This document shows, piece after piece, positions 144 through 52,259 of a DNA stretch of 64,000 nucleotides. The first letter of the stretch is position 1, and the number at the start of each line of letters is the position of its first letter. The notes under the pieces are model-generated. The model saw nothing but the letters and a program-made list of their open reading frames with translations, searched no databases and was not told the DNA's origin. Both the position numbers and the translations under genes were made by a program. Origin of the DNA: Macrostomum lignano. Taxonomy: Eukaryota. Where the stretch lies: assembly GCA_002269645.1 (NCBI GenBank), contig NIVC01000010.1, positions 1,240,001 to 1,304,000 on the forward strand, in the 5' to 3' direction.

Positions 144-2183
144 ATGCACTCGACAAGACAACAAAGTTACTTCCCTCAAGCATCCGCCGGTGTGGCAAAG
201 AAGTTTCGAGCGGCCAACGGAACAGGCAGCTCTGTGGAAAATATTATGCATTTAATTTCCAGTCTCACACAACCTGCAAGCGGCTGCAACTTCTATGTAA
301 CTTTAGACGACAAAACACTTCAGCGGTTGAACTCAATGGTCGATGAGGTCACAAGCTGCACTCGAGACCGACTTCCGCTAGACAACATGGAACTAATTCA
401 GGAACACCAAAAAATGAGCTTCACAGGTGAAATGTTTCAAAAGTTGCTTCAACATGCAGCCACAGAAATTTCAAAGTTCCTGATGATGAATGTTAGACAG
501 AATACTCAGGCTTCAGAAATGAATTTACGGGCAGCGCAACAAGGAAATAAGGCTCAAACAGGTAAGAGCAAGGTGCTGCGGTACTACAACAACAGCACAC
601 CTGGTGGCAGAGCGTCATCCGTGCCGCAGACTCTGGACTTCCGCAATCAGCGATGGGACACGAGTGGAATGCCGGCCTCGATTCCACAACACCTGTGGGA
701 CATGAGACGAGAGGAGAACAGGTGGCAGTACTTCCACCTGCCAGATGCCAGCTTCACAGCGGCTCACCTGGTGTCAGTGACGGATCTGGCTGCTGACGGA
801 TTCTTCTACCTGCAGGAGTCGGACAGAGTAAAGTGTGCATTCTGCAAGGGTGTGCTCAAGGACTGGGAGGCGGGCGAGCAGGTCCGAGAGGCTCACAGAC
901 GCCACTTCTCCACCTGTCCGTTCGTGCTGTTCGTCGAGGTCGGCAACGTGCCTCGAGAACACAGAGAGCCGGAAGGAGACTCGAGGTCAGCAAAGCTGGT
1001 AGAGGCAGTGCAGTGCAGTGATCAGACTGCAGATGATGCAGCAGTGATGGTGAACGGAGACTGGAGAATGAAGCTGGTCGCTGAGCTACCACCGATGGAG
1101 TTCGCTGGACTGAACGAGTGGGCACTGGCGACACGCGAAACTCGTGGACCGAATGCACGACGCGTTGTGGACGACGAGCTGGTCGTAGTCGACATGATGA
1201 AGCGTCCTCAGCTTCCAGTGTCGAGCGAAGTAGCGAGATCTGCGTGCTCCGAGAGAGCTCTCACGAACCTGTCTGCTCTGCAGCACAGTGTCGAGAGTGA
1301 TCCATCGAGTGTGACTGCCAAACACACACAGTTCGAGACCTACCAAGCGAGGTCGCAGTCTCTGCACTCGGCTCTCGTTCAGCAGCCAGTGTACTTGCTT
1401 GCAAAGGCGGGCTTCTTCTACTCGGAAGCAGAGAGAGCGACCTGCTGCTTCAGCTGCGGACTTTGCATGAGCGAGTGGAGCTGCGACGATGATGTGTGGG
1501 TTGAGCACGCCAGGTGGTCACCTCGGTGTCCTCACGTGTTGTTGGAGCGAGGTAGCGACTTTGTACAGGCGGTGCATCGACTGTCGCCTCCCGTGCAGCA
1601 CCCGACTTGTGGCGCCTCAGCTCAGCGTCACACTGCATTGGTACAGACGGACTCAACTGCATCAGCTGGTGTTGCGACTGTCGACGGGTCCGCAGTCCAC
1701 AGCAGTCGCGCAGACGAGGCTCTCGCAGTCACTCCTGGAGTCGAGTTCAGAGTTGAGGCCAGAGACATCAAGGCGAGAGCCGACCTGCCCGTTGTGAGAC
1801 TGCTCACTCAACTCGGATTCTCCGCTCTGCAAGTGAGACTGTTCACAGAGCTGCATCTCAGACAGCGAGGCGATGACTTTGCCACATCGGAGCTGTTCCT
1901 CGACTTCATGCTCACCGAGAGCCGCCGCATGCGCAAGCAGTCGCAGGACCCGGAGGCGTTCTTCGAGAGCAGGATGTCTCAGATTCGAGAGTCTCTGAAC
2001 CAACAGCCGAGACCCCGAGACACAACCGACTGGAAGACGTGCAAGGTGTGCATGGACAAGGAGGTGAACATCATGCTGCTGGACTGTGGTCACGTGGCCT
2101 GCTGCTCAGTGTGCGCCAAGTCGCTGAAGACGTGCCCCATCTGCAGAGCCTTCATTCGGGGTGTACTTTTTCTGCGGGACTGA
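144..2183 (+). CDS. Inhibitor of apoptosis protein (IAP/BIRC family), BIR-BIR-UBA-RING, intronless
   Basis: 679-aa ORF. Two BIR motifs (GFFY..DRVKCAFC..L.DW....H..H...C; AGFFY....CCFSC....W.....W.EH..W.P.C), a UBA-like segment (LPVVRLLTQLGFS, cf. the MGF loop) and a C-terminal C3HC4 RING (CKVCMD...CGH..CC..CA..L..CPICR). Confidence 0.95.
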   Translation: MHSTRQQSYFPQASAGVAKKFRAANGTGSSVENIMHLISSLTQPASGCNFYVTLDDKTLQRLNSMVDEVTSCTRDRLPLDNMELIQEHQKMSFTGEMFQKLLQHAATEISKFLMMNVRQNTQASEMNLRAAQQGNKAQTGKSKVLRYYNNSTPGGRASSVPQTLDFRNQRWDTSGMPASIPQHLWDMRREENRWQYFHLPDASFTAAHLVSVTDLAADGFFYLQESDRVKCAFCKGVLKDWEAGEQVREAHRRHFSTCPFVLFVEVGNVPREHREPEGDSRSAKLVEAVQCSDQTADDAAVMVNGDWRMKLVAELPPMEFAGLNEWALATRETRGPNARRVVDDELVVVDMMKRPQLPVSSEVARSACSERALTNLSALQHSVESDPSSVTAKHTQFETYQARSQSLHSALVQQPVYLLAKAGFFYSEAERATCCFSCGLCMSEWSCDDDVWVEHARWSPRCPHVLLERGSDFVQAVHRLSPPVQHPTCGASAQRHTALVQTDSTASAGVATVDGSAVHSSRADEALAVTPGVEFRVEARDIKARADLPVVRLLTQLGFSALQVRLFTELHLRQRGDDFATSELFLDFMLTESRRMRKQSQDPEAFFESRMSQIRESLNQQPRPRDTTDWKTCKVCMDKEVNIMLLDCGHVACCSVCAKSLKTCPICRAFIRGVLFLRD

Positions 2184-2700: not shown

Positions 2701-2937
2701 CGAAAAATAAAATCTCTAAAACTTTAAGACTAAAGCCATTAATAAAAAAATTGAAAGACCTGAAATTACCCATGCAGACTTTGCTCCTTAGTCTTCAGTC
2801 ATGCCTTGGCAGTGAAGCAGGGGATAATTAATTTAGTTGGTGGTATATTTATTAGTAATAATTAAACCATTGGAAGTTTAATCGGATTGTTTAGTCTATT
2901 CATCGTAAAACATCCACCTAATTCTGATCTGCAGCGA

Positions 2938-3767
2938 TCAGCCTTGAAAACCGAAGAATCGCTTCGACTGAGGAGCACCGATGGGAATGTTGTACTCGAG
3001 GATGAGCACCTTCATCATGGCGTACATGCAGCGCCTGTTGCACCTCTCGCTGCTATCGTCGCAGTCGCATTCGCTGGGCAACTCGCCAGCCAGCATCCTG
3101 GTGCCCATCTTGGCGTTCTCCATGTTCTCCACGATCTTGTCGTAGCTCAGAGAGCCATCCGGCGGGCAGCGGACTCCGTTGACGATGCAGGGGCGCAGGA
3201 AGGCTTCAAGCTGGCCCTCGGTGAGCCGGTTGCGGCCGCCCGGCTGAGCAGACTGGGAAAGAGCGAGTTAAGATTGATTATGCACAGAATTATTAGCAAT
3301 TATGAGTATTGAGAGCGTTCATTTACATGTAAGAGTCACGTCTGTATTGGATGTGGACGGGCATCTGGACGGGAATCAGCACTGGATTCGGACAGATCTG
3401 CATTGGATTCGGACAGATCTGCACTGGATTCGGACAGATTTGCACTGGATTCGGACAGATCTGCACTGGATTCGGACAGATCTGCATTGGATTCGGACAG
3501 ATCTGCACTGGATTCGGACAGATCTGCACTGGATTCGGACAGATCTGCATTGGATTCGGACAGATCTGCATTGGATTCGGGCATATCTGCATTGGATTCG
3601 GACATTCTGGAAGATCTGCATTGGATTCGGACAGATCTGCACTGTATTCGGACAGATCTGCATTGGATTCGGACAGATCTGCACTGGATTCGGACATTCA
3701 CAATAAATAGAGGTCTTACCACAGTGGCCACGATGGCAAAAAAAGCAGCACAGACGATGAGCTTCAT
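2938..3767 (-). CDS. Two-exon 120-aa secreted Cys-rich protein / putative prohormone (exon 1 3767-3720, exon 2 3252-2938)
   Basis: Exon 1 MKLIVCAAFFAIVATV ends at a GTAAG donor (phase 0). The acceptor CTTTCCCAG at 3253 gives in-frame SAQPGGRNRLTEGQLEAFLRPCIVNGVRC...ECDCDDSSERCNRRC...QSKRFFGFQG*. Hydrophobic signal peptide; AATAAA about 85 nt downstream (2848-2853). Confidence 0.8.
3380..3697. repeat. 21-bp minisatellite (TGGATTCGGACAGATCTGCAY), about 15 copies, inside the intron of the secreted-protein gene
   Basis: Directly visible tandem unit; accounts for the repetitive WIRTDLH/QICPNP ORFs. Confidence 0.95.
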
Positions 3768-4559
3768 GATTGAGAGGTGGTTAAGCTGTTCTCAAGTTGC
3801 AGTTGCAGTGATCTGGCTGAGGAAAACGATTTGCTGCCTCCCTAAAGTTTCGAATGCCGTTAAATAGACTTTTTACAGCAATTATTGCAACGGAATGTGT
3901 CGAATCTGACTTTAATGGTTTTCTTCCGGCCGGGAGGGGGGCGTATGGGATGGTGAAAATTGGAGGGTCGACAAAAAGAGCAGGAAGCTTTTAATGCGAG
4001 GTCATTATGTAGAGTTTTTCGACAATATCCAACTTATAGTGTCATTCGGTACGGAAACTTTAGATAAGCTTTCACAGTTTAAATAGTGCTCGAACAGTTT
4101 TCCCTCAAAAGAGAAATGTCTGCTAAAAATGCTCTACCGCTTTGGTCTGGAGCGGCAAACGCGTCCGACGCTCGCTCCAGAACCCCTGGTTCGATTCCCT
4201 GCGCGGCCACATTCATTTCTGGAGTTTGCGCCTGCGCCTGCGTACATTATTGGCGCCTTGGCGCTCAGAAATTAGAATTGCCTTAGTCGCTGAAGGCGTC
4301 GCACCAGGGGCTCATAACCTTCCTGCAATCATTAGTATGTCCCCGTTTAAAGGATGTCATTTTGCGCAGAATGAGGAATGTTAATGGCTACTGACAGTTT
4401 ATTTTGAAGTTTTGTAGCTCTAACGTTTTTAATAGATTGGCTCGCTTTCGATGTCTCCTGGTCGTCAAGGATGGAAAAACTGCTTAAGAAATAATTTGGA
4501 ACCAACCAATCTTAAATAGGTTTTAAATGGGCAACGATGTTGCCCACAAATGCTTTCAT

Positions 4560-8023: not shown

Positions 8024-8421
8024 ATTCTCCGCCCTGCAAGTGAGACTGTTCACAGAGCTGCATCTCAGACTGCGAGGCGATGACTTTGCCACATCGGAGC
8101 TGTTCCTCGACTTCATGCTCAACGAGAGCCGCCGCATGCGCAAGCAGTCGCAGGACCCGGAGGCGTTCTTCGAGAGCAGGATGTCTCAGATTCGGGAGTC
8201 TCTGAACCAACAGCCGAGACCCCGAGACACAACCGACTGGAAGACATGCAAGGTGTGCATGGACAAGGAGGTGAACATCATGCTGCTGGACTGTGGTCAC
8301 GTGGCCTGCTGCTCAGTGTGCGCCAAGTCGCTGAAGACGTGCCCCATCTGCAGAGCCTTCATTCGGGGTGTACTTTTTTCTGCGGGACTGATAAGCTCGT
8401 ACAGGAGCTGGACTGTGAATT
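8024..8421 (+). pseudogene. 5'-truncated near-identical copy of the IAP 3' end (part of UBA + RING + start of 3' UTR)
   Basis: Aligns with 1817-2213 with only scattered substitutions; one extra T in the terminal T-run alters the C-terminus; BIR domains absent. Confidence 0.9.
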
Positions 8422-8756
8422 CTACTAGGATGTGTCCCAATTGCTTCGTCAAAACAGTTTTAATTTCCTATAAACGACGGCACCTAAGCGCTGGTTATAT
8501 TCGTTATACGTGTAGTTTTTAAAACAAGTTCTTTAGGAGCATTCAAAGGTATTCAAATGTATTCTTTTCTTTCAGGAGCATTCAAAGGTATGCTCCTGTA
8601 GTCTCTTTTAGGCTATCAGTCATGTACCCGCATCATCAAAAAAGTTTTTTTGCCAAATAACTAAGATAAGTTTTAAAAGCTTAGGTGCACAGTTTTTACA
8701 TTATATTTGTTCAGTAGTTTGTTTTCCTCTTCATATTTTTGCTTACGATCGTACTT

Positions 8757-27762: not shown

Positions 27763-29325
27763 GTGGAGCGGCCGGGTGGGTACCGCGCCCCTTTGAGGGT
27801 AGCCCACCAACCTTTTATCATGGCCTTCGAGCCGACTATGGATAAACAAGCTATTTCTAGGGACGGGGACCCTTCTAAACCCCAACCTCAGTCCGAAGGA
27901 CCGGCCGGCCCTGCTGGCAGATCCCAACCGACTGATTCAACTGTGGCAAAGGAAGGACCGGCTGGCTCTGCTGGCAGATCCGACCAGAGCTACCAAACTC
28001 AAAATACCCTAAGACCTGCCAGCTCCGCTGGTGGATCTAAGGGAACCGCGAGCTCTGAGCCTAAAGGACCGGCCAAATCTGGCAGATCCGATGAAGCTCA
28101 GCGGGCTCGGCTTGAGCGCAAACGCGCTAAACAACGCGCCAAAAGGCAGGCCAAGAAGGGAGCTGCGGGGGCCAAAGCGGCGGCGTCCACCATGGATGCT
28201 GAAGCGACTGGAGTCCCAAGGCAACCAGGCGGGCCGGCCGGTGGAAGCTCCAGTAGTTCAGCGGCGGCGCTCCCTGGAGCTGCTGCCGCGGCTGCTGAGG
28301 CCGAAACCACGGCGCAACAAATGGCCACTGCCAACAAGGAGGTTCCTTCGGGAGCTACCTTTGCGGCGAAGGCCAAGGCCAAAATCCCGGGAGTGATCAT
28401 CCAAGGTCGCGACCAGGACTGGACCACTGATCAGCTTCAAAAAGTGTGGAGTGCTGTTGACTCCTATCTGATTGAGCTGACTGTCGAGGAGGGAATCTCC
28501 ATCGGCGTTGAGCGGATGGTGCTGCGAAGCACATTCGTTCTTATTGCTCCTAGCAGCGAGGAGGACGCTCGGCGGCTGCTCCAGCGGCTACCGACGGTCT
28601 CCTTGGATGCTGACCTTGGTGGAGCTCTTTTTCTTCGCGAGGGCCAGCGTCCAAAGACGATACCCTATGTGGTTTTCGTCCCTGCTAAGAGCACCGCAGC
28701 TGGACCAGACGTTATTCGCCGGGTCCTACTGCGTCTGAACCCCGACCTCCCTGCTAGTGGACTGGTGTATCACCGCAAAGTCCGCAGGGGGGAGACGGGC
28801 AACTCAATTGTCCTCGGCCTTTCCAGCACTTGGGCGAGTCGGTACCCTAATGGATCCTCTTTCCAGCTGGGTGCCCTCAAGCTCAAGTTGCGCCGAGGAA
28901 AGTCTGCCAAAGGGAAGGCTACTGCCAACCCCGGCATCTCCGGCAAGAGCGGGGCGCAGTCTAAGGCCCAAGGAAAGGCGCAAGCCGATCCCAAAGCCAA
29001 AGCTGCATCTCGCCCCTCTGCTAGCAGCAGTTCGGCGACCGCGGTAACGGCTCCGGCCGAGCCCCGGGAACCAAACCTGCCAGTCGGAGAAGGAGTTGAG
29101 GACGAGGCCGGGTCTTCGGAATCCGAGCTCTCCTCGGCCACCTTGGTGGGGTCTGAAGGTAAAGATGCAGGTGAGGAAGCTTCCTCCATCCTGTCATCGG
29201 AGCCTGAGGACTCTGCTGGGGGGGCCGGTGGGGGTGAGGAGGCCATGGACGTCGACCAACTCCCATCTCCCAGTCAAGCCCCAGCGGCCTGGGACGAGGA
29301 CGATCTGTTGTCCAAGTCTCCTTGA
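27763..29325 (+). CDS. LINE ORF1 (first ATG at 27820); basic and low-complexity flanks around a central RRM/DUF4780-like core
   Basis: Long ORF ending 39 nt before ORF2; core VFVPAKST...RRVLLRLNPDL recalls LOA-clade ORF1; no CCHC knuckles seen. Confidence 0.8.
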   Translation: MERPGGYRAPLRVAHQPFIMAFEPTMDKQAISRDGDPSKPQPQSEGPAGPAGRSQPTDSTVAKEGPAGSAGRSDQSYQTQNTLRPASSAGGSKGTASSEPKGPAKSGRSDEAQRARLERKRAKQRAKRQAKKGAAGAKAAASTMDAEATGVPRQPGGPAGGSSSSSAAALPGAAAAAAEAETTAQQMATANKEVPSGATFAAKAKAKIPGVIIQGRDQDWTTDQLQKVWSAVDSYLIELTVEEGISIGVERMVLRSTFVLIAPSSEEDARRLLQRLPTVSLDADLGGALFLREGQRPKTIPYVVFVPAKSTAAGPDVIRRVLLRLNPDLPASGLVYHRKVRRGETGNSIVLGLSSTWASRYPNGSSFQLGALKLKLRRGKSAKGKATANPGISGKSGAQSKAQGKAQADPKAKAASRPSASSSSATAVTAPAEPREPNLPVGEGVEDEAGSSESELSSATLVGSEGKDAGEEASSILSSEPEDSAGGAGGGEEAMDVDQLPSPSQAPAAWDEDDLLSKSP

Positions 29326-29364
29326 TGGCCCTGGGCTCTAGCCAGATATTGCATTTAATACAGT

Positions 29365-30654
29365 ATGACTAAGCTCCACGCTGCCAAAGGAGCGACATTC
29401 TGTCTGCAAATAAATTTACAGCATTGCGTATCTGCGTCAGTAAATCTGATGAAGATTGCTGAGCTGTACAGGCCAGGCCTCATCCTGATCCAGGAACCCT
29501 GGATGCGCAACGGTAAGTTGCCCAACATTCCCTCTGGCTACTCTGATTTTTATGTGTGTGGCCCGGGGAACAGCCGCCCTAGAGCGGCTATCCTCGCTGC
29601 TAGCCATCTCCAGGCTTGGCTGAGGACTGATCTCTCTGATGGAGACCTTTGCGTCATCCAATCTAATCATTTCTCTCCGCGTACGTGTCTTGTTGCCTCG
29701 GTTTATATCCCAGGCGACAGAGACCCTGCTCCCGAGAGTTTACTGCGCCTTGCGCAGTACTGCGAGTCCCAGAACGCTGAGCTGTGCTTAGGGGGCGACC
29801 TCAACGCGCACCACAAGCACTGGGGCAGCAAAGATACCAACACTAGAGGAGAGGAGCTTCTGGCCCTCATCTCTAACACAAACCTCATGCTCTGCAACCG
29901 CGGCAGCACTCCTACCTTTAATAATGGCAGATGGACCGAGGTCCTCGACGCCACACTCGTTACCCCAAGACTCTTTGACAGAGTCAAGGAGTGGAGAGTC
30001 TGGTCTGAGGAGCCCTCCCTGTCTGACCACTGCTTTATCGCCTTTAATATCGCGGACACTAAAACCCAGTCTCCGATCACTTGGAGACGCAATATCCGCA
30101 ACACTGATTGGGCGGCCTACAAGGCTGCCCTTGATCTGCACCTGCAGGAACTCACGGACTTACGTCCGATTGAGACCTGCGAGGATGTGGATCATATGGC
30201 TGAGACGCTGACAGGTTGCATTATTGCAGCCTACGAAGCGGCTTGTCCTGCTCGCGCCTACAGAGGCAAGACCTCGGCGCCGTGGTGGAACCCGGAGCTG
30301 GGGAAACTCAGGCGGAAGGCCAAAAGCCTTCATCGCCGTGCCATGAAGACCGGAAACCCGGAGGACATGGAGCTTTTCCGGCAAGCCTCCCGCAATTTCA
30401 AATCTGAAGTGCGCAAGGCCAAGGAATGTAAGTGGCGCCAATTCTGCAATGAATTGGATCAAGACAGACCTACTTCTAGGCTTGTCAAGGCCCTTACAAT
30501 GGACAAAATGTCCAAATTAGCCATGATAAAAAAGATGATGGCTCTCTTACTAAAGACCCTGAAGAAGTGCTTCAGCATATGCTTAGCACATTCTTCCCGA
30601 GGGTACCTACTGCTAGACCGGAGCCCAACCATTCGATGGATGGAGCCACCCTAG
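29365..30654 (+). CDS. LINE ORF2, N-terminal part: apurinic-like endonuclease
   Basis: QINLQHC, LIQEPW, LGGDLNAHH..WG, PTF, VLDATL and SDH are APE motifs; the frame shifts -1 near 30528-30534. Confidence 0.92.
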   Translation: MTKLHAAKGATFCLQINLQHCVSASVNLMKIAELYRPGLILIQEPWMRNGKLPNIPSGYSDFYVCGPGNSRPRAAILAASHLQAWLRTDLSDGDLCVIQSNHFSPRTCLVASVYIPGDRDPAPESLLRLAQYCESQNAELCLGGDLNAHHKHWGSKDTNTRGEELLALISNTNLMLCNRGSTPTFNNGRWTEVLDATLVTPRLFDRVKEWRVWSEEPSLSDHCFIAFNIADTKTQSPITWRRNIRNTDWAAYKAALDLHLQELTDLRPIETCEDVDHMAETLTGCIIAAYEAACPARAYRGKTSAPWWNPELGKLRRKAKSLHRRAMKTGNPEDMELFRQASRNFKSEVRKAKECKWRQFCNELDQDRPTSRLVKALTMDKMSKLAMIKKMMALLLKTLKKCFSICLAHSSRGYLLLDRSPTIRWMEPP

Positions 30655-33104
30655 CGGCGGGCATTGTCACTGAAGACCTAATCGCTCGTGCGGTCAGAAC
30701 CTTCAAACCCTTCAAATCTCCTGGACCTGATGGTATCTACCCTGTTCTCCTTCGTGAAGCAGCCAAGATACCCTCGTTCCTGAGACTCACCCGCAATCTT
30801 ATGCGGGCCTCTATCCAGCTGGGATACGTTCCCAAAAGCTGGACTGAAGCTCGAGTAGTCTTTATTCCCAAACCTGGGAAGGGTGACTACCAAAGCGTCA
30901 AGGCCTTCCGGCCAATTAGCTTAACGTCAGCAATGCTTAAGCTCACTGAGAGGCTTATTCTCTGGCGGCTGCTCTCCTGCGAGCTGACAGCGATGCCCCT
31001 CAGCAATAATCAGCACGCCTTCCGTACCGGGAGGTCGACTGACAGCGCCCTGCATGCGATTGTCGAAAAGATTGAACGGGCGGTACTGGGTGACGGTTAC
31101 GCCCTGGCTCTCTTTCTTGACATTGTTGGCGCCTTCGACAACGTTATCTTTGAAGCGTTTCAGAGGGCCCTTCAAAATCGCAAAGCTCATGCTACCCTCA
31201 TACGGTGGATCATGTACATGATCTCCAACCGTACGGTCACTGCCCAACTTCTTGGGCAAACTGCCTCCACCAGAGTCTGTAAGGGTGGACCCCAAGGCGG
31301 AGTCCTCACCCCGACGCTCTGGAACCTGGTCATGGACGCTCTTCTGAGTGACTCCCGACCTGACCCCGTCTTCAAAGTCGGGTATGCTGATGACGTCACG
31401 GCCATTGTGGCAGGACCGTCTCCCAGCACGCTCAGGGATCTGATGCAGAGCTTTATCCGCAAAGCAGAATCCTGGGCCAATGACAATGGTTTGGAACTCT
31501 CTGAGCCCAAAACCGTTGCCATTATGTTTACCAGCAGACTACGCTGGAACATACGTCCTCTGCAGCTCTACGGCAGAGATATTGCCTTCGCGCACCAGAC
31601 CAGATGTCTCGGGGTCACACTTGACCACCGGCTCAACTGGTCCTTCCACGTGAAAGCAAAAGCTAAGCGTGCCTCAGCCATCCTGGCCCAGCTCCGACGA
31701 GCACTTGGCACTTCTTGGGGTCTATCCCCAAAGCGGCTTTGGTGGATCTATACTTCCGTAGTTAGACCTGCCATTACGTACGCCTCTGTTGTCTGGGTTA
31801 GCGCTACCCAGGTCAAAAGCCATGCAGACCTGCTCAACACGATCCAAGGCAGAGCGTGTAGGCTCATCTGCAACGCCACCAGGTCCACGCCCTTTGCTGG
31901 CATGGGGGCCTTTCTTAATCTTCCGCCTCTTGACCTCTTCATCAGGGGTGAGGCGGCTAGAACGACGCGGCGTCTAATTGATGCCGGCGTCAAATTCATT
32001 TACATGAGAGCACCTGCTAAGCGGAACCTTGTCCCGCATAGCGATCTGTGCCTCAACTTTCTCAACGAGTGTCAGGCCAATCGCGTCTTCACCGATGGCA
32101 TTGCCTCAACGCTCAACCTGAGACAGCGCTACTCCGTAGCTATCGACTCGCGCGATAACATCAATGACCATTGGAACCCTGGTGAGCTTCATTGCTACAC
32201 CGACGGTTCTAAGCAGTCAGCCAACACCGGCTTTGGTGTTGGAATCTTTCTGAACGGGAGGGTCATCGCTACCCACGCTCAATACACTGGGGTCAACTCC
32301 AGTGTTTTCCAAAATGAAGTTCTGGCCATCAGCTCCTGCACTGCAGAGCTTCTCGCCACTGGCGTTACTGGTAAGAACATCATTTTCCATTCGGACAGCC
32401 AAGCTGCCTTGCACGCCATCAGTGGCTGCAGCACCAACTCTGCTACAGTCCTTGACTGTATCAAACTCCTCAATGTGTTGGGTTCCGCCAACAAAATTAC
32501 CCTTAAGTGGGTTCCGGGGCATGTGGGGATCCGAGGAAATGAGTTGGCTGACACCCTTGCAAAAGTTGGTGCCTCCGGCTCCTCTCTCGGCCCCGAACCT
32601 CTTGTCCCGATTCCTGGCTGTGTCATCGACTCGCGCATCAAAGCGTGGATCAGGACTCAGCACCGCTCGACTTGGGCGAACCGCACGAACTGCAGGCAAT
32701 CCAGAGGCGCTGTCCCTCAGCCCTCTCACCAGCTCCGGAAGCTCCTCTTGCGCCTCTCGCGCAGAGACATCCGGGCTGCCACCATGACCCTCTCTGGTCA
32801 CGGCTGCTTCTCCAGGCACCAGTACCTGCAGGGCAACGCCACCAACGCCACCTGTAGTTTCTGCAACTCAGGTGACGAAACCGCTGAGCATTTCGTCAGC
32901 ATCTGTCCCGCCTTCACGCGGGCCAGACTCACTTACCTCGGGCCACACACATCTATTACTGAAGCGTGCAAACCCGAAAACTTTAATCAGCTCATGCGCT
33001 ACCTTCGGGCCACCCGCAGGGCTGAACTCTCCTTTCCAGAGAGCACCATAGCTGCTGGCGACACTGGGGGACCTCCCTGGGCGGCGCCAACCCTCCGTCC
33101 ATAG
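30567..33104 (+). CDS. LINE ORF2, C-terminal part: reverse transcriptase, RNase H, CCHC finger
   Basis: KSPGPDGI, RPISL, QHAFR.GRST, LDIVGAFD, PQGGVLTPTLW, YADD, LGVTLD; RNase H YTDGS...E..AI...DSQAAL...WVPGH.GI.GNELAD; CSFC...ETAEHF...C. Confidence 0.95.
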   Translation: MLQHMLSTFFPRVPTARPEPNHSMDGATLAAGIVTEDLIARAVRTFKPFKSPGPDGIYPVLLREAAKIPSFLRLTRNLMRASIQLGYVPKSWTEARVVFIPKPGKGDYQSVKAFRPISLTSAMLKLTERLILWRLLSCELTAMPLSNNQHAFRTGRSTDSALHAIVEKIERAVLGDGYALALFLDIVGAFDNVIFEAFQRALQNRKAHATLIRWIMYMISNRTVTAQLLGQTASTRVCKGGPQGGVLTPTLWNLVMDALLSDSRPDPVFKVGYADDVTAIVAGPSPSTLRDLMQSFIRKAESWANDNGLELSEPKTVAIMFTSRLRWNIRPLQLYGRDIAFAHQTRCLGVTLDHRLNWSFHVKAKAKRASAILAQLRRALGTSWGLSPKRLWWIYTSVVRPAITYASVVWVSATQVKSHADLLNTIQGRACRLICNATRSTPFAGMGAFLNLPPLDLFIRGEAARTTRRLIDAGVKFIYMRAPAKRNLVPHSDLCLNFLNECQANRVFTDGIASTLNLRQRYSVAIDSRDNINDHWNPGELHCYTDGSKQSANTGFGVGIFLNGRVIATHAQYTGVNSSVFQNEVLAISSCTAELLATGVTGKNIIFHSDSQAALHAISGCSTNSATVLDCIKLLNVLGSANKITLKWVPGHVGIRGNELADTLAKVGASGSSLGPEPLVPIPGCVIDSRIKAWIRTQHRSTWANRTNCRQSRGAVPQPSHQLRKLLLRLSRRDIRAATMTLSGHGCFSRHQYLQGNATNATCSFCNSGDETAEHFVSICPAFTRARLTYLGPHTSITEACKPENFNQLMRYLRATRRAELSFPESTIAAGDTGGPPWAAPTLRP

Positions 33105-35202: not shown

Positions 35203-37650
35203 CTAAGACTCGTACCTGAGCTCGGGATCTGCTTCAGCCGTCGCAACTCGCTCCGCTCGAGAACTGCGCCAGAGACCGGGGCTCAGCGCGAGCGACGCCT
35301 GCTCAAGCAACCGGGCCGCCGTTGACTCATTGAGGCAGGCCCTGCGCAGATCTTCCGGCTGCGCCTTGGCCCGGCCGAAGTAGCGCAGCAGAAACAGCAG
35401 CATGTGGCGGGGATGCGTCAGGCAGCGCGACAGCGGGTCGCTCAGCAGCTGCCAGGACCCCGGCATATGGTGAGCTCGAAACTGAAAGTCGTGCCTCAGC
35501 GCTGCCAGAGTGGCCGTTTTGAGCAGGGTCATGACGATCGGGTTGCTGGAGGCACCGCGGTTGATGGTGCCGACCGCCGCGCTGCTGTCGACGTAGCAGG
35601 CCACCTTGCCGCCGGCCAGCTGCTCCTGGAACAGAATGATGGCGAGCAGCGGCAGTACCGTCTCCTTGGCGTTGATGTGCTCGCTCAGGAAGATGCCACC
35701 GGCGTCACTGCAGAAGTCGACGAGGCGGAACTCGCGCTGGCCATCAGAGGTGCTCAGGATCATGCCACCGGCACTGACGCAGGCGTCCGTCTCGACCGCT
35801 GCCAGCACTCGTGCACGCCGCCACAGCTTGTCGGTCGGGAACACTGGGATTGCATGCTGCCAGAACTGCAACTGGGCCAGTAGCTCGCCGCGCACCGGTA
35901 CTCGATGATGCTGCTCAGGAATAGCGATGGTTATCTCCAGGAGCGCGCGAAGCAGGGCCTTTGCAGGTTTGGCCACTTTGCAGAACCAGTTCAGTTTGCC
36001 GACTAGGTGCTGAAGGCGACGTTTTTGCAGGCTCTTCGAGTTGGCGCAGTCCTGGAGAAGTTCTCGAAGGCCGTCCATCTTCTCGGCGGGCAGTGACAGC
36101 AGGCCAGTCAATGTGTCGATCTGCACACCCAGGAAAGTGACCGAAGTGGCTGGGCTCTGCGTCTTGGCCCAGTTGATCTCAAAGCCGAGGCGCTGCAGGG
36201 TGACCAGCAGAAAATTGTGCAGCTGCAGGCAGACCTCGTAGTCCCGGGCAGCTATGCAGAAATCGTCGAGGTATGCGATGACGACGAATTTGGACAGATG
36301 CGAGAATTGCCTGTACATAAAGCGCTTGACAGCTTGCGTTAGGCGGTGGAAAATGTTGACTGATGCCGCCGCACCGAATGGGAGTCGCGTGTCAACCAGA
36401 TAAGTGGGCTGACCGTCCAGCTCGAACGTCCACCGGAGCCCCGTCGCCTGATAGCAGTCTGGGTGCACCTGAACACTTCGGTAGGCGTGGCGTAGGTCGA
36501 CCTTGCTGATGAACCAGCCTGGTGCCAGCTGCCTGGTGAGATCCTCGACATTGGCAAACTTCATCTTCTGGCGGGGCTTGTACAGATCGTTGAGGCTGTT
36601 GCCCTGTGGCGCGGACGCGTCGTGAATCAGGCGGATGGCGCCGTCTGCCTTCGGGACGGCGCCCAGTGGGCTGATGATGGTCGGCCTGGCGATGCCCAAG
36701 TCAGTTGCGCTGATGTACCGGCCAGCCACGACCTCCTCTCTGATCCGCAGCTCAACGGCATTCCGATTTGCCTCGCAGCAGGCGGATGCATGATTTTCGA
36801 GCTGGGATTCGCTGGTCGGAGCCGCGTCGGTGATGCGAAAGCCATCGCGAATTCCCGCGATCAGAAACTCCGCGTCCGAGTCTCCGAGCAGGACTGGTGT
36901 CCAAGCAGCAGTTAACAGCGGCCAACGTTTTCGGAGTGCAGCCACCGGGCCGGCAACAGGGCCGGCAGCAGCGCCGGCAGCGGGGCCGGCGGCAGGGCCG
37001 GCGGCAGGGCCGGCGGCAGGGCCGGCGGCAGGGCCGGCGGCAGGGCCGGCGGCTGGGCCGGCGGCAGGGCCGGCAGCAGGGCCGGCAGCAGGACCGGCAG
37101 CAGGGCCGGCAGCAGGACCGGCAGCAGGGCCGGCAGCAGGACCGGCAGCAGGGCCGGCAGCAGGGCCGGCAGCAGGACCGGCAGCAGGGCCGGCAGCAGG
37201 ACCGGCAGCAGGGCCGGCAGCAGGACCGGCGGCAGGGCCGGCAGCAGGAACGGCAGCAGGACCGGCGGCAGGAACGGCAGCAGGACCGGCGGCAGGGCCG
37301 GCAGCAGGACCGGCAGCAGGGCCGGCAGCAGGACCGGCGGCAGGGCCGGCAGCAGGGCCGGCAGCAGGGCCGGCAGCAGGGCCGGCGGCAGGGCCGGCGG
37401 CAGGGCGAGTGGCAGGGCGAGTGGCATGGCGAGCGGCAGTGCGAGCGGCAGGGCGAGCGGCAGGGCGAGCGGCAGGGCGAGTGGCACGTCGAGCGGCAGG
37501 GCGAGCGGCAAGGCGAGTGGCAGGGCGAGCGGCAGGGCCAGTGGCAGTGCGAGCAGCTGTCTCGCATGGAATTAAAATTTTGGACTGTCTATCAGACGCC
37601 GTCCGCTTAGGGCTAAAACTGGTGCCGCCGCGACCCGCCTCTTTGCTCAG
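35203..37650 (-). CDS. DIRS-type RT + RNase H, with an upstream repeat-encoded (PAAG)n linker; no ATG start of its own
   Basis: [39 protein letters not shown]; RNase H ETDA, HINAKE, VDS. The frame is open from about 37650 to 35203; the track start at 36945 is a GTG. Confidence 0.85.
36948..37555. repeat. 12-bp GC-rich minisatellite (~50 units: GGCCGGCAGCAG type, then GGCGAGYGGCAG type) inside the Ngaro-like element
   Basis: Directly visible; gives long repetitive ORFs on both strands. Confidence 0.95.
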
Positions 37651-41449: not shown

Positions 41450-43057
41450 TCACTTTTCCTCAGCCTCCGCCTTCTTGGCTTCAGCAGTCTTGGTGGCAAT
41501 CGCGGCTTTCAGTAGCTGCTCCTCTGAAAAGAACATTCCGTGAATACCGGAGGGCACTGAGACGCCCTTGAAGTCGACCTTGGCCACCTCAGTCATGTTC
41601 TTGGCATCCAGAATGACAAGGAACAGAGACCGTTGATCCACAGTGCCCACTACAGAGGCGAGCAGAAGGCCATGGTCTTCACTACAGCGATCAGGATGCT
41701 CAACGAATATCGCCTCGGATGGTTCGCAGCCTGGAGCATTCCATTGCAGAACTTCCTCGGTCTGCCAGTCCAGCTTCACGATGCTGGAGTTGGACGATGC
41801 GGCAGCAGACGCCTCGGTGGTAGACATAGATTTGCCAACACCATAGCCGTAGCGGTATGGCTCACCGTTGTACCGGTAGTTTATCTGGGGAAACTCGATG
41901 GCCAGTCGACACGCAGGCTCCGTGCATTTCACGATCTCAGTGCTGCCAAGCTTCAGTCGGTAGCGACGAAGCGTCACATCTGTCTTTGGCAGCTCACTCA
42001 GCTGCTGCATCTCTTTCAGCGACAGTCGCTTAATTAAATCTCCAGACTTGTAGGCGCTGAGATCCATGACGATCTCTACACTTCCGTCCTTGCATTCCAC
42101 CTCGTATGCGTTCATGTGATGGAAGGTGAAAAAGGCCTCGGCTGTTAGCGTCTGCACTAGCTTGCCGTCGGCGCGAGACACGACGTGAAGCAAAGAGCCG
42201 TAGCCGTCATGCCAGTTCAGACAGTCTCCGTAAGACAAACCGAATGTTCCTGCGGCTATGAGGCGCGGAATGTTCAGCGCTAAAGGCGACTCAACCAGAA
42301 CTAGATAGTTGCGAGTCATGGCGAAGCTGTGAAAATACGCTGGATTGAAGCGCCACCTCGACGGTATTTTTGCTACAACTTCGGCTTTATCCAAGCCTCC
42401 GGGCGGGATGCGTGCGAATATGTACTGCGGACCCTCACGATCACGGAATGCTGTGCCGACGTTCAGAACACTGCCGTTCGACTCAATGTGCGGGTGTGCC
42501 GTCACTGTGTTGATTGGTATTACCTTGTTCAGGTCGACTTTTTCCAGACGGTCTAAAGTCCTGGGATCGATTCGGTTAAGAAAGTTGGTCTCGGTAGTGG
42601 CGTAAACTTGATCTCCAATCGGAAAGATGTTCACGAAGGTGTTGTCAGACACCATCGACCTTAGTTTTGCCTCCTCCTCGCTTGGCCAGAAATAAGAAGC
42701 GAACCGTCCTAGCCACGATTTGCACGGATCTGGAAACGTCCGCGTGCCGAACTCGCTGACAACGATGCGCTTGTACGCCATGTTTGTCGTGTACGCGTCC
42801 GAACGGAGGAATTGGCTAGTGAACTCCACCTGACCGTTCGAGATGCTGAACTTTCGCAACAGTGCCAGCCCATCGAAGTAGTGATGGTACTGAGTGTCGC
42901 CCACTTCAAACAGACCCGGTCCATTCCGAATGAGGCTGCCGTTCAGCCAGGTGGGTACAGAGCCTCCGTCTCGGACTACTCCTCGCACTGGTTCGGTGTT
43001 CTCTCCGCTGGCAGACGTGTACAAAGCGGCACCCAGGTTAGTTAATTTATCGGACAT
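41450..43057 (-). CDS. Carotenoid cleavage oxygenase (BCO1/BCO2/RPE65/NinaB family), intronless
   Basis: 535 aa; WLNGSLIRNGPG, HYFDGLA, EFGT..FPDPCK, DNTFVN; four iron-ligand His in AHPH, YFHSF, FHHMNAYE and GIHG. Confidence 0.96.
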   Translation of the reverse strand: MSDKLTNLGAALYTSASGENTEPVRGVVRDGGSVPTWLNGSLIRNGPGLFEVGDTQYHHYFDGLALLRKFSISNGQVEFTSQFLRSDAYTTNMAYKRIVVSEFGTRTFPDPCKSWLGRFASYFWPSEEEAKLRSMVSDNTFVNIFPIGDQVYATTETNFLNRIDPRTLDRLEKVDLNKVIPINTVTAHPHIESNGSVLNVGTAFRDREGPQYIFARIPPGGLDKAEVVAKIPSRWRFNPAYFHSFAMTRNYLVLVESPLALNIPRLIAAGTFGLSYGDCLNWHDGYGSLLHVVSRADGKLVQTLTAEAFFTFHHMNAYEVECKDGSVEIVMDLSAYKSGDLIKRLSLKEMQQLSELPKTDVTLRRYRLKLGSTEIVKCTEPACRLAIEFPQINYRYNGEPYRYGYGVGKSMSTTEASAAASSNSSIVKLDWQTEEVLQWNAPGCEPSEAIFVEHPDRCSEDHGLLLASVVGTVDQRSLFLVILDAKNMTEVAKVDFKGVSVPSGIHGMFFSEEQLLKAAIATKTAEAKKAEAEEK

Positions 43058-46000: not shown

Positions 46001-47445
46001 CCAACTTGTTTCTTGGACTGACAGACTTAATAGCTTTAAGTATATGTGCCCGTATACATGCACTTGCTGCTCATCTTAAGTTCGATCCGATTAGCGTTAT
46101 TTAAAAAATGTATTTTTAATTATCGGATAAAGTAGATTAACAAGTAGAAAGAACTAGCTCAACAGTGAAGTATTTAATTTTTATCTTTTTGGTTCAAACT
46201 TATAAAAAAATCAGCAGGTATTGCAATTTTCTTCCCATATTGGATTTTATTTCTTCTCGAGATGGAACGCGGGTATTATTCAATTTTTCTCAACTGGACC
46301 AATTTTCGCTTTTACGTGTGTACATGCGACTTTTTCACATTGTTCTAGATTATTTTTTTATGCACAATTGAGAATTACTATCAATAAGTTTATAGTTAAA
46401 ATGAAATATAGAAAATTATGATTTTTTAAATAACTATGATTTTCTCCATAGAATTATTTTTTAACTTTAGACTTATATAATATAATATTAATTTTTTATT
46501 TTTAATGCCACATTCTAAAATTACAAAACAGAACGATACTGCCACTGAAAACAAACTTATCAAAGTTTAGGTTAAAAGAGACTTAAAATAGTTGTATTAG
46601 AATGGAAATTTATTTATAAATATTTATTAATTTTAGGCCTACTTTGTTTTAAAGCCTGTCCTAGGCCAATAGGCAGTTCTTTTTTCCTCCTAACTAAGGC
46701 CTACCAAGTACCAAACCCAACTCAATTGATCTAGTTTTGATGACTACTACAATAGCATTGATTAAAATGTTTTAGTTTTGGATAAAAAATACTATATACT
46801 AAATATACTAAATATTATATACTATATATAATAATAATATATATAGTATATTTTTATTGAGTTTATATAATGTATAAAGAAAAAATTATTATTAACCATA
46901 CATGCCCAACCTTAAAGTTTCACCTATCTGGTTCTACTTAGTTTTGTCCAGATTTGCAACTTAGTTCCTCCTAATTGTGACTTAGTAAGTTCTTCTCAAT
47001 TGCAACTTAGTTCCTCCTGATTGCAACTTAGTTCCTCTCAATTGCAACTTAATTCAATTGCAACTTAATTTTCACTTTGTATATGACTTTTCTTGCCTTT
47101 TTCTCTTTTCTCTTTCTCTCTCCTCTTTCCCTTTCTCTCTCCTCCCTCTTTTCTTTTCCTTTTCTCTTCCTCTCCTTCCTTCTTACCTCAATTTTTTGTT
47201 TTTTTTGCATTTTTCAATTTTGCGACTTACCTTGGCTAGTGGCCATTTCACATGTCTAGTTTGGATAGGTCAGATGCCTATTGGGCATATATGTTATTAA
47301 TTGTTCTTTAATAAACTCTTAGTGTTGGCAGTTTAAAAAACTATATTGACATACCAATGGCAATCTTTTATTATTATCATCAATTTAAAATAATGATTTT
47401 TCAGATTGTTTCTTCAAGTGTTATATGTAATTCATTGTCTATACA

Positions 47446-50400: not shown

Positions 50401-52100
50401 CTGCAGCCCCAGTCCTTAGCCCTGAGGATGTTGCAGCCCCAGTCCTTAGCCCTGAGGATGCTGCAGCCCCAGTCCTTAGCCCTGAGGATGCTGCAGCCCC
50501 AGTCCTTAGCCCTGAGGATGCTGCAGCCCCAGTCCTTAGCTCTGAGGGTCCTGCAGCCCCAGTCCTTAGCCCTGAGGATGCTGCAGCCCCAGTCCTTAGC
50601 TCTGAGGGTCCTGCAGCCCCAGTCCTTAGCCCTGAGGATGCTGCAGCCCCAGTCCTTAGCCCTGAGGATGCTGCAGCCCCAGTCCTTAGCTCTGAGGGTC
50701 CTGCAGCCCCAGTCCTTAGCCCTGAGGGTCCTGCAGCCCCAGTCCTTAGCCCTGAGGGTCCTGCAGCCCCAGTCCTTAGCCCTGAGGATGCTGCAGCCCC
50801 AGTCCTTAGCTCTGAGGGTCCTGCAGCCCCAGTCCTTAGCCCTGAGGATGCTGCAGCCCCAGTCCTTAGCCCTGAGGATGCTGCAGCCCCAGTCCTTAGC
50901 TCTGAGGATGCTGCAGCCCCAGTCCTTAGCTCTGAGGGTCCTGCAGCCCCAGTCCTTAGCCCTGAGGGTCCTGCAGCCCCAGTCCTTAGCCCTGAGGATG
51001 CTGCAGCCCCAGTCCTTAGCCCTGAGGGTCCTGCAGCCCCAGTCCTTAGCCCTGAGGGTCCTGCAGCCCCAGTCCTTAGCCCTGAGGGTCCTGCAGCCCC
51101 AGTCCTTAGCCCTGAGGGTCCTGCAGCCACGCCCGCTTGCCCGCCCCGCAGGATCGAATCGCCAGTCTGCAGGCAGCCCAGGCCGAGTGCGAGTTCGCCG
51201 AGCTGTGTGAGCAGCTCCGCCACCAGCTGGCCATGCTGGAATCGCTCCGGTCGGCCTGTCAGGAGCGCCGACGCCTGCGCCGGTGCCAAGCCGATGCGGA
51301 GGCGAGTCTGAGCCGCCGGCGCGAGGAGCGGGTCAAACTGGAGCGTGCGGGACGCGACCTGACGCTCTGCGAGACGCAAATCGCAGAGGCTGAGGCGGCG
51401 GTAAGAGTTTTGCTCGGGCTGAGCAGTCCTCGCAGAAGTTGTAGAAGAATTCAGACTACAAGTTTATAGATTACTACAGCTTGACAATTCCAAAGTCAGG
51501 GTGGCCATAGTGCTCTGATGTGCCAGCGACCCAGGCTCGATTCCAAGTGCAGTCACATTAATTTGGGGCTGAATTGGAATCTCGGCTTGGCTCTGCTTGT
51601 GCAGTTAACGTCTTCAAGGGCCAACACCCAAGGCACAGTGAAGTGTACATGCCTAACGATAAAGTTAGGGCCCCTGTACACTCCTGTGTGAGTGTGTGCC
51701 TGCGCGTATGACTGCGTAAGTATCCGCGCGCTTGTGTGCCTGCTCAGGGGAGTCGGCGGAATGGGCAGCAACGCCTCTCGCCGGTTGTGTGACAATGTCG
51801 CTTAAAGCTCCTCTAATACAAAAGCCTGAAAAGTCACCTTTAAAAAATCAATTGACTTTTGCCAACACTCCCGCCCAGGTGGACCGATGCCGTTCGGAGT
51901 TCGAATCGGCGTCAGCCGCAATCAAAGCGGAGTCGGATAGGATCGATCTGCTTCGCGGCTTTGAGCTGCGCTCGGCTCTGCTGTGCAGCATGGAGCACCA
52001 GCTGTTGCAGCAGCAGCAGGTGGCCGACGCCTGGCAACAATTTTTGCCAGAGGCGCACAAAATTAGCCCGAACTCACCGAGTGAAGTTGAAAACAATTGA
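47446..52100 (+). CDS. SNX1/2: Divergent sorting nexin 1/2-like PX-BAR protein; exons 47446-47544, 48224-48474, 48844-49207, 49877-50140, 51152-51400, 51879-52100
   Basis: All junctions are GT-AG and phase-compatible. PX motifs KKGDGISAYVVY, HRFSDFL, LPPKPEK, FVERRR.ELERFL; BAR start WFEE; C-terminal WQQFLPEAHKI. Confidence 0.88.
49268..49731. repeat. Perfect 16-bp tandem array (GTCACTTTGTTGACAT) x29, SNX intron 3
   Basis: No variant units seen; 464 bp. Confidence 0.97.
50208..51127. repeat. 30-bp tandem array (GCCCTGAGGATGCTGCAGCCCCAGTCCTTA), ~30 copies, SNX intron 4
   Basis: Directly visible; two recurrent variants (ATG/GTC and GCC/GCT). Confidence 0.97.
51499..51805 (+). mobile_element. 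SINE-like family B, longest copy (SNX intron 5)
   Basis: tRNA-like head GGTGGCCATAGTG...GGCTCGATTCC; body shared with 12519-12791. Confidence 0.75.
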
Positions 52101-52259
52101 TCGATTGATTGTTGATATTCGGGATTTTTTGCTATTTATCGAATCTATTTATAATATCGAATAGGTACGAATTTGAAGGTCTACATATATCGAGATTTGT
52201 TTTGAAGTCTGGGATTGGATGCTGTCTATGTGAATAAATTACTCTGAAAATCGTTTTCG

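What the first reader, a model, noticed from the sequence alone, without database searches (positions are those of the whole stretch)
2938..3767. Hidden two-exon secreted protein that looks like a precursor for an amidated peptide (FFGFQ-amide) plus a 6-Cys domain
Seen: splicing across a minisatellite-filled intron gives a 120-aa protein with a signal peptide probably cleaved at SA|Q (possible pyroglutamate), six Cys in the mature region (C-x6-C...CxC-x6-C-x3-C), a dibasic KR site and terminal FFGFQG*, followed by AATAAA. Known: KR cleavage plus C-terminal Gly is the convertase/PAM amidation signature. The Cys spacing does not match insulin, CHH/ITP or eclosion-hormone patterns as I recall them. 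Inference: an undescribed neuropeptide, pheromone or seminal/toxin-type precursor.
Basis: partly seen in the sequence, partly recalled or inferred. Interest (0 to 1): 0.75.

Follow-up and report, generated by a model that had tools for sequence, protein, structure and literature searches.

The report
Orphan secreted cysteine-rich flatworm protein
The two-exon gene is real: it is an unannotated third copy of a Macrostomum lignano gene for a small secreted, disulfide-locked helical protein from a family seen only in that species in these searches, and the proposed amidated peptide FFGFQ-amide rests on a tail that no other family member shares.

Summary
The sequence observation holds. On the minus strand, exon 1 (3767-3720), a GT..AG intron (3719-3253) holding a 15-copy 21-bp minisatellite, and exon 2 (3252-2938) give the 120-aa protein as described.

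The window is Macrostomum lignano scaffold NIVC01000010.1:1240001-1304000. Two 97%-identical copies elsewhere in the assembly are annotated, from RNA-seq-derived transcript models, with the same two-exon structure (hypothetical protein Mlig031165g1/g2). This copy's exact product is not on record.

The protein belongs to a multigene family found only in M. lignano in the databases searched. Members have a signal peptide split by a phase-0 intron and a roughly 75-aa core carrying six cysteines. AlphaFold2 predicts a three-helix core (pLDDT about 90). There is no Pfam, PDB-sequence or Foldseek-PDB match.

The conserved unit is the Cys domain. The C-terminal tails do not align between paralogues. 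Seven of nine lineages have di- or polybasic tails, but only two have a Gly placed for amidation.

The neuropeptide reading is therefore possible but weakly supported (about 0.2). The function remains unknown, and I found no expression data.

The parts
3720..3767 (-). Exon 1 (coding part): ATG plus 15 codons, MKLIVCAAFFAIVATV, most of the signal peptide
   Evidence: The same exon is annotated in the homeologue. An in-frame stop lies 9 codons upstream.
3253..3719 (-). Intron, 467 nt, phase 0, GTAAGA...TTTCCCAG
   Evidence: The splice sites are identical in L001. Paralogues P0003, P0011 and P0007 have a phase-0 intron at the equivalent place.
3375..3696 (.). 21-bp minisatellite inside the intron, 15 copies, unit ATCTGCATTGGATTCGGACAG on the + strand; it keeps several frames open, which creates spurious ORFs
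   Evidence: 0 matches expected by chance. Copy number and arrangement differ in the homeologue. Spurious ORFs on both strands are listed.
2938..3252 (-). Exon 2 (coding part): residues 17-120 plus TGA (2940-2938)
3247..3252 (-). Last two signal-peptide residues (S17, A18); predicted cleavage VSA|Q leaves an N-terminal Gln19
   Evidence: The hydrophobic core has a 10-residue Kyte-Doolittle maximum of 3.09, with V at -3 and A at -1. No SignalP was available. Paralogues P0011 and P0005 also have Gln just after the hydrophobic segment, where cleavage would be expected.
2986..3222 (-). Conserved six-Cys three-helix domain, residues 27-105 (C38, C45, C78, C80, C87, C91; helices 28-41, 53-71, 85-103)
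   Evidence: Family alignment A1: C38, C45, P75, R89, C91 and Y93 are invariant; P37, C78, C87 and A94 are nearly so. The AlphaFold2 core has pLDDT 86-92.
2959..2964 (-). K113-R114 dibasic site in the tail
   Evidence: Identical in the homeologue. Not conserved in paralogues.
2941..2958 (-). FFGFQG, residues 115-120; candidate FFGFQ-amide (unproven)
   Evidence: This part of the model has low confidence (pLDDT about 55). The peptide is mentioned in no paper.
2848..2853 (-). AATAAA polyadenylation signal 84 nt after the stop (an ATTAAA also lies at 2882-2877)
3860..3866 (-). TATA-like TATTTAA about 100 nt upstream of the ATG (consensus match only)

Best explanation
This is an intact copy of the Macrostomum lignano gene Mlig031165; its exact product is not on record. 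It is one of three near-identical copies in a partly duplicated genome.

It encodes a 120-aa preprotein. Exon 1 supplies most of a signal peptide. After cleavage at VSA|Q, the 102-aa product folds in the ER into a three-helix domain locked by three disulfides and is secreted.

One disulfide, C80-C87, is inferred because both cysteines are lost together in the second domain of the two-domain paralogues. The other four cysteines (C38 and C45 with C78 and C91) would tie the N-terminal helix to the C-terminal helix.

The folded domain is the conserved and therefore functional unit of a multigene family of at least nine lineages, so far seen only in Macrostomum. It most likely acts outside the cell as a ligand or binding protein.

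The C-terminal tail is a disordered, fast-changing appendage. In most members it ends in, or contains, basic clusters that secretory-pathway convertases and carboxypeptidases could trim. In this member such trimming would release FFGFQG, which could be amidated, but that peptide is probably a by-product and not the reason the gene exists.

Shown: the gene structure, family membership, Cys conservation, and the absence of any known family or fold. Inferred: secretion, disulfide pairing, tail processing and extracellular action. Unknown: tissue and partner.
For: Gene model and organism:
- The gene model is read directly from the sequence.
- The window is NIVC01000010.1:1240001-1304000 of M. lignano assembly GCA_002269645.1.
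- P0001 (PAA50938.1 / PAA88221.1, Mlig031165g1/g2) is 97% identical with the same 120-aa two-exon model.
- GenBank gene models for this assembly come from RNA-seq-based transcript assembly (PMC5730564).
- The window is collinear with the homeologous scaffold over 6.2 kb (BLAST identity 96.7%; substitution-only identity 94-99% by segment).

Family:
- An exhaustive phmmer search of 1.84 billion representatives found nine proteins at E<=0.001. One is an unrelated EF-hand repeat protein of unknown source; the other eight are all M. lignano proteins.
- A profile search added P0018.
- In alignment A1, C38, C45, P75, R89, C91 and Y93 are invariant, while the tails cannot be aligned.
- Exon 1 is 42-60 nt and is followed by a phase-0 intron in all four lineages tested.
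- In the second domain of the two-domain members P0006 and P0018, C80 and C87 are lost together. The linker between their domains has no dibasic site.

Structure and known families:
- The AlphaFold2 model has pTM 0.66, a core pLDDT of 86-92, three helices and a low-confidence tail.
- There is no Pfam hit for any member at E<=10.
- There is no significant PDB sequence match; the only hit has E=1.7. There is no Foldseek-PDB match; the best has E=7.

Tails:
- Seven of nine lineages have basic clusters in the tail.
Against: - No direct RNA evidence exists for this particular copy, and its exact product is absent from the protein collection. It could be silent.
- The comparison with the homeologue shows 4 non-synonymous and 1 synonymous change, and CDS divergence is no lower than in the flanks. 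Nothing shows purifying selection on this copy.
- Secretion, disulfide pairing and processing are predictions only.
- The KR plus terminal Gly, and the Gly-Lys-Arg end of P0003, fit a prohormone reading in which the tail matters more than I allow.
- The structure model rests on only 14 sequences.
Confidence: 0.7

Rival explanations
1. One reading: a prohormone. A convertase cuts after K113-R114 and PAM converts FFGFQG to FFGFQ-amide, which is the active neuropeptide or pheromone. The six-Cys domain is a carrier or a co-released associated peptide, as neurophysin is for vasopressin.
For: - The signal peptide, the KR site and the terminal Gly are all present.
- The motif arises in only about 1.3% of composition-matched shuffles.
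- Paralogue P0003/P0010 ends ...QQRFPGKRSV, and five other lineages end in or contain polybasic runs.
- Flatworms make amidated peptides (FMRFamide-like peptides, NPF) and have PC2- and PAM-type enzymes (my own knowledge, not tested here).
Against: - The tail does not align between paralogues, whereas the Cys domain is conserved.
- P0005/P0014 and P0008 have no basic site in the tail.
- Two-domain members have no cleavage site between their domains.
- FFGFQ occurs once, not in repeated copies.
- No paper mentions the peptide.
- The KR-FFGFQG tail is seen only in copies that are 97% identical, so its age cannot be assessed.
Confidence: 0.2
2. A fast-evolving reproductive or gland secretion, for example a seminal-fluid protein from the prostate glands or a product of another secretory gland. 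It would belong to the large class of small, secreted, taxon-restricted proteins described in M. lignano.
For: - The family was found only in M. lignano.
- It is a multigene expansion that includes domain duplication.
- The homeologue comparison gives 4 non-synonymous to 1 synonymous change.
- M. lignano is reported to have putative seminal-fluid proteins identified by an in situ hybridisation screen (PMC5977470) and rapidly evolving reproduction-related genes (PMC7336406); I saw only their titles and abstracts.
Against: - Neither the gene nor five paralogue ids searched appear in the held supplementary tables of the seminal-fluid screen or of the rapid-evolution studies. Those files are incomplete and partly use other transcript names.
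- There are no expression data at all.
Confidence: 0.25
3. This copy is a silent duplicate, a young pseudogene in waiting. Only the two annotated copies would be expressed.
For: - The exact product is not on record, while the twin copies are.
- The genome has extensive recent duplication.
- A degraded, frameshifted fragment of the same gene lies about 5 kb from the annotated copy (L001 15930-16650).
Against: - The ORF, both splice sites, the poly(A) signal and 500 nt of upstream sequence are intact; the upstream sequence is 97.4% identical to the annotated copy.
- GenBank models overlapping repeats were filtered out, which could explain the missing annotation.
Confidence: 0.15

Closest known systems
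M. lignano hypothetical protein BOX15_Mlig031165g1/g2 (PAA50938.1, PAA88221.1; UniProt A0A267DNS2)
   Same: 120 aa and 97% identical, with the same two exons, the same splice sites, the same KR-FFGFQG end and a minisatellite in the intron.
   Different: Four substitutions (F9L, A63T, G66A, I107V) and a different minisatellite arrangement. It lies on other scaffolds. It is annotated, whereas the window copy's product is not on record.
M. lignano paralogues: Mlig014137/003397/013351, Mlig007900/032223, Mlig001682/030151, Mlig028719, Mlig014068, Mlig029205 (two-domain), A0A1I8G7C1, A0A1I8G9Z9
   Same: Signal peptide, a phase-0 intron inside it, an RPC-x5/6-C motif, a P-x2-C...C...C-x3-C-Y-Y-A-x2-K motif and similar length.
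   Different: Only 27-43% identical. The tails are unrelated (RRRR, HRK, KRR, GKRSV or none). The spacing of the third and fourth Cys varies (x1 to x3). Some members carry two domains. UniProt's automatic 'WAP' and 'Saposin B-type' names for some of them are not backed by Pfam.
Cys-rich peptide hormones and their precursors (CHH/ITP, insulin/relaxin, vasopressin-neurophysin)
   Same: Works-like comparison only. Each is a secreted product of about 70-110 aa with three or more disulfides, basic processing sites and sometimes a C-terminal amide. The 2 + 4 distribution of Cys recalls the insulin B and A chains, including one dispensable pair within the four-Cys cluster.
   Different: No Pfam hit to Insulin, Crust_neurohorm or Eclosion at E<=10. 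No Foldseek hit to any of the many solved structures. The Cys spacing is different, and there are no dibasic sites flanking a C-peptide.
Small helical carrier proteins (insect OBP/CSP)
   Same: Secreted, helical, disulfide-locked, about 100 aa, in multigene families that include two-domain forms.
   Different: The only hit is an OBP at E=1.7 in the PDB profile search, which is not significant. There is no Pfam hit. The predicted bundle has three helices, not six.

Membership tests
Mlig031165 gene and its M. lignano paralogue family | Significant sequence similarity across the whole domain with conserved cysteines | tested here: met
   E=3.7e-74 to P0001 and 3e-14 to 6e-08 to the paralogues. 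Invariant C38, C45, C91, P75, R89 and Y93.
Mlig031165 gene and its M. lignano paralogue family | Shared gene structure: a short first exon and a phase-0 intron within the signal peptide | tested here: met
   The window has a 48-nt exon 1. P0001, P0003, P0011 and P0007 have 48, 45, 42 and 60 nt, all phase 0.
Amidated neuropeptide precursor (functional class) | N-terminal signal peptide | tested here: met
   Hydrophobic core with a Kyte-Doolittle maximum of 3.09 and V-S-A at -3 to -1. This is a rule-of-thumb check; no SignalP was run.
Amidated neuropeptide precursor (functional class) | Dibasic cleavage site immediately before the peptide, and a Gly amide donor at its end | tested here: met
   K113-R114 followed by FFGFQG then the stop. 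The chance estimate is about 1.3%.
Amidated neuropeptide precursor (functional class) | The peptide and its processing signals are conserved in relatives while spacer regions drift | tested here: not met
   The opposite pattern holds among paralogues: the domain is conserved and the tails cannot be aligned. Orthologues from other species could not be reached with these tools.
Amidated neuropeptide precursor (functional class) | The mature amidated peptide is detected; expression is in neurons or endocrine cells | not testable with these tools
   No peptidomic or expression data were found.
Insulin/relaxin superfamily | Profile match (Pfam PF00049) and a Cys framework of B: C-x11-C and A: CC-x3-C-x8-C | tested here: not met
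   No Pfam hit at E<=10 for any of the 14 domains. The framework here is C-x6-C ... C-x-C-x6-C-x3-C. No Foldseek hit.
CHH/ITP and eclosion hormone families | Profile match (PF01147, PF04736) | tested here: not met
   No Pfam hit at E<=10.
Saposin-like and WAP four-disulfide-core domains (automatic UniProt names on three paralogues) | Profile match to the SapB or WAP models, and a saposin fold or a four-disulfide core | tested here: not met
   No SapB_1, SapB_2 or WAP hit in any member at E<=10. The domain has six Cys, not the eight of WAP (my recollection). The prediction is all-helical. No saposin-like structure appeared in Foldseek.
Insect odorant-binding / chemosensory proteins | Profile or structural match | tested here: not met
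   The only match is 6jpm_A at E=1.7. There is no Pfam hit. Foldseek listed the mosquito D7 protein 3dy9 only at E=8.7 with TM 0.21.

The most novel reading that the evidence does not exclude
The Mlig031165 family is a Macrostomum-specific set of secreted signalling proteins built on a three-helix, three-disulfide fold that has no match in the PDB. Its variable tails would be processed by convertases, yielding in this gene FFGFQ-amide and in Mlig014137 a ...QQRFP-amide end. That would make it a new flatworm hormone or pheromone family, possibly tied to the species' reciprocal mating biology.
Probability: 0.15. Interest if true: 0.6.

Novelty: new variant of a known kind. Interest (0 to 1): 0.3.

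Why it matters
If the family proves to be a set of processed extracellular signals, it would give M. lignano a lineage-specific hormone or pheromone system built on a fold not yet solved. M. lignano is a transgenic, RNAi-amenable flatworm model for regeneration and sexual conflict, so the system could be tested directly.

As things stand, the gene is one more taxon-restricted secreted cysteine-rich protein of unknown function. Such proteins are common in animal genomes.

The practical gains are modest:
- A third gene copy whose product is not on record has been located.
- A family of at least nine lineages has been defined, with its invariant residues.
- One disulfide (C80-C87) has been inferred.
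- The amidated-peptide idea now has a clear test.

Tried and rejected
- Drosophila or insect neuropeptide origin was my first impression from codon usage. It was rejected when the only close hit was M. lignano and the window was placed exactly in that assembly.
- Known families: Pfam on the protein and on all 14 family domains gave nothing at E<=10 except chance RhoGAP/DUF7545 hits. The PDB sequence profile gave only an OBP at E=1.7. Foldseek against PDB gave a best E of 7.
- Relatives outside Macrostomum: the exhaustive phmmer search and the profile search found none. The one non-Macrostomum hit, P0002, is a 1404-aa protein with 11 EF-hand-like repeats. Its score is the sum of many weak matches to residues 43-80, and the 'DG' it matches is not conserved in the paralogues, so I rejected it as homology.
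- Tandem copies in the window: tBLASTn found none.
- Using the degraded paralogue fragment (L001 15930-16650) to date the tail: its homology ends about 12-16 codons before the stop, at the edge of the duplicated segment. It also carries a +7-nt frameshift and lacks exon 1. It is uninformative.
- Selection test between homeologues: only 5 CDS differences, and CDS divergence equals that of the flanks. There is no power.
- Expression or function from the literature: 'Mlig031165' occurs in no paper text. It and five paralogue ids occur in none of the held supplements of six M. lignano papers, and a seventh paper had no supplements held. FFGFQ occurs in no paper. A 2026 review on marine flatworm neuropeptides does not mention Macrostomum.
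- A tRNA-like stretch upstream of the paralogue fragment: ARAGORN found no tRNA.

Full report

MKLIVCAAFFAIVATVSAQPGGRNRLTEGQLEAFLRPCIVNGVRCPPDGSLSYDKIVENMENAKMGTRMLAGELPSECDCDDSSERCNRRCMYAMMKVLILEYNIPIGAPQSKRFFGFQG*

- The donor is GTAAGA and the acceptor is a pyrimidine tract plus CAG. The intron is phase 0.
- The intron contains a 21-bp minisatellite of 15 copies at 3375-3696.
- An in-frame stop lies nine codons upstream of the ATG. AATAAA lies 84 nt after the stop and a TATA-like TATTTAA about 100 nt upstream.
- Without splicing, the reading frame runs into the repeat and gives a meaningless 143-aa ORF. The repeat keeps several frames open on both strands.

**Where the window comes from.**
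- The only close protein hit is a Macrostomum lignano hypothetical protein, BOX15_Mlig031165g1/g2 (P0001). It is 120 aa and 97% identical.
- An intronless RPE65-family ORF in the window (41450-43057, minus) is encoded exactly on scaffold NIVC01000010.1 of assembly GCA_002269645.1. The fetched 5.6-kb locus is identical to the window.
- The window is therefore NIVC01000010.1:1240001-1304000, and the gene lies at 1242938-1243767.
- The window's own 120-aa product is not among the 15 billion sequences indexed. I take this copy to be unannotated. Its two twins, on NIVC01000199.1 and NIVC01003532.1, are annotated.
- GenBank models for this assembly derive from RNA-seq transcript assembly, after removal of models overlapping repeats (PMC5730564). 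The splice junction thus has indirect transcript support through the twins, whose exon-intron boundaries are base-for-base the same.
- The same paper reports 180 Mb of the assembly in duplicated blocks that are at least 95% identical. That fits the collinear 6.2-kb alignment seen here (BLAST identity 96.7%; substitution-only identity 94-99% by segment).

**Copy comparison.** The window copy differs from the twins at five coding positions, four non-synonymous (F9L, A63T, G66A, I107V) and one synonymous. Coding divergence (1.3-2%) is no lower than in the neighbouring non-coding DNA. This comparison has no power to show constraint on the domain or on the tail.

**A degraded relative.** About 5 kb from the annotated twin lies a degraded fragment of the gene (L001 15930-16650).
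- It carries the same minisatellite, lacks exon 1 and has a +7-nt frameshift.
- Its homology stops roughly 12-16 codons before the stop codon, so it does not date the tail.
- The corresponding place would lie just left of the window.

**Family.**
- An exhaustive phmmer search of 1.84 billion cluster representatives found nine proteins at E<=0.001. One is an unrelated EF-hand repeat protein; the rest are all M. lignano proteins. A profile search added one more.
- They are single-domain proteins of 108-137 aa (Mlig014137, Mlig007900/032223, Mlig001682/030151, Mlig028719, Mlig014068) and two-domain proteins of 174-219 aa (Mlig029205, A0A1I8G7C1, A0A1I8G9Z9).
- In the alignment (A1), C38, C45, P75, R89, C91 and Y93 are invariant. 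P37, C78, C87 and A94 are nearly so.
- The consensus reads RPC-x5/6-CP ... P-x2-C-x1-3-C-x4-6-C-x-R-x-C-Y-Y-A-x2-K.
- All four lineages I examined at the DNA level have a 42-60-nt first exon ending in a phase-0 intron two to four residues before the predicted signal-peptide cleavage site. This is independent support for both the splice model and common descent.
- In the second domain of the two-domain proteins, C80 and C87 are replaced together. The simplest reading is that they form one disulfide.

**Structure and known families.**
- AlphaFold2 on A1 gave pTM 0.66 and a core pLDDT of 86-92, with helices at 28-41, 53-71 and 85-103. The tail (110-120) is low-confidence.
- Foldseek against the PDB found nothing; the best E was 7.
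- No family member hits any Pfam model at E<=10. That includes Insulin, Crust_neurohorm, Eclosion, SapB and WAP.
- The PDB sequence profile search gave only an insect OBP at E=1.7.
- UniProt's automatic 'WAP' and 'Saposin B-type' labels on three paralogues are therefore not supported here.

**The tail.**
- The tails cannot be aligned.
- Seven of nine lineages have a dibasic or polybasic motif after the last helix. Five of them have it at the very end of the protein: WRRRR, SHRK, LRRK, DKRR, EKK.
- Two lineages have none.
- Only two lineages have Gly placed for amidation: this gene (terminal Gly) and Mlig014137 (…QQRFPGKRSV).
- A KR with a terminal Gly arises in about 1.3% of shuffles of the mature sequence.
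- I conclude that trimming at basic residues in the secretory pathway is plausible for the family. The conserved, selected unit is the folded domain. A specific FFGFQ-amide signal is possible but unsupported, and I put it at about 0.2.
- The two-domain members, which have no cleavage site between domains, also argue that the domain is a product in its own right.

**Function.** I found no expression or functional information.
- The gene id appears in no paper.
- It and five paralogue ids searched appear in none of the held supplements of six M. lignano studies, and a seventh paper had no supplements held.
- The peptide appears in no paper.
- My best account is a secreted, disulfide-locked three-helix protein acting extracellularly.
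- The family's restriction to Macrostomum, its expansion and its fast-changing tails fit either a reproductive or gland secretion or a lineage-specific signalling molecule. I cannot separate these with the tools at hand.

**Verdict.**
- The gene is an ordinary-looking member of an undescribed orphan family, and two of its three copies are already annotated as hypothetical proteins.
- Interest is moderate to low (0.3). It would rise if tissue expression or peptidomics supported processing.

**Limits.**
- No orthologues from other Macrostomum species could be searched.
- SignalP was not available.
- The structure model rests on 14 sequences.
- Model coordinates could not be inspected for disulfide geometry.

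Noticed in passing
window 144-2183 (+) and 8040-8522 (+): A 679-aa single-exon ORF with two BIR domains and a C-terminal RING finger, i.e. IAP-like. A second, partial copy of its RING-containing C-terminus lies 6 kb away. The exact 679-aa product is not on record.
   Followed up: partly
L001 15930-16650 (-), homeologous scaffold NIVC01000199.1: A degraded fragment of the same gene: exon-2 homology at 82% nucleotide identity, the same 21-bp minisatellite fused directly to the coding part, no exon 1, a +7-nt frameshift and a different end. The equivalent place in this scaffold would lie about 2 kb left of the window.
   Followed up: partly
window 27763-33104 (+) and 35203-36945 (-): A non-LTR retrotransposon with endonuclease, reverse transcriptase and RNase H ORFs, plus a second reverse-transcriptase fragment next to a 66% GC stretch with overlapping ORFs on both strands.
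   Followed up: partly
window 41450-43057 (-): An intronless 535-aa RPE65 / carotenoid oxygenase family gene (Pfam E=2.6e-107), annotated in GenBank with exactly this product. It served to place the window in the assembly.
   Followed up: yes
window 49268-49731, 50211-51128, 52255-53372, 59828-60161: Four further minisatellites with periods of 16, 30, 22 and 69 bp; the first is 29 perfect copies. Long 'ORFs' at 50186-51379 and 52288-53400 are repeat artefacts. Tandem repeats are reported to make up about 15% of this genome, so the repeat in the intron is not unusual.
   Followed up: partly
window 3302-3867, both strands: The 21-bp (7-codon) minisatellite keeps several reading frames open and yields ORFs of 102-154 aa on both strands, including a 143-aa intron-retention ORF that starts at the true ATG. 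These are not genes.
   Followed up: yes
P0002 (ENA, 1404 aa, source organism unknown): A protein with 11 EF-hand-like repeats scored E=1e-17 against residues 43-80 (CPPDGSLSYDKIVENM...) through many weak repeat matches. The matched 'DG' is not conserved in the paralogues, so this is probably not homology. A remote helix-loop-helix origin of the domain is not excluded.
   Followed up: partly
window 46001-48000 and 54001-58000: Strongly AT-rich stretches (28-30% GC) and a block with high GC skew (0.34 at 56-58 kb). Not examined.
   Followed up: no
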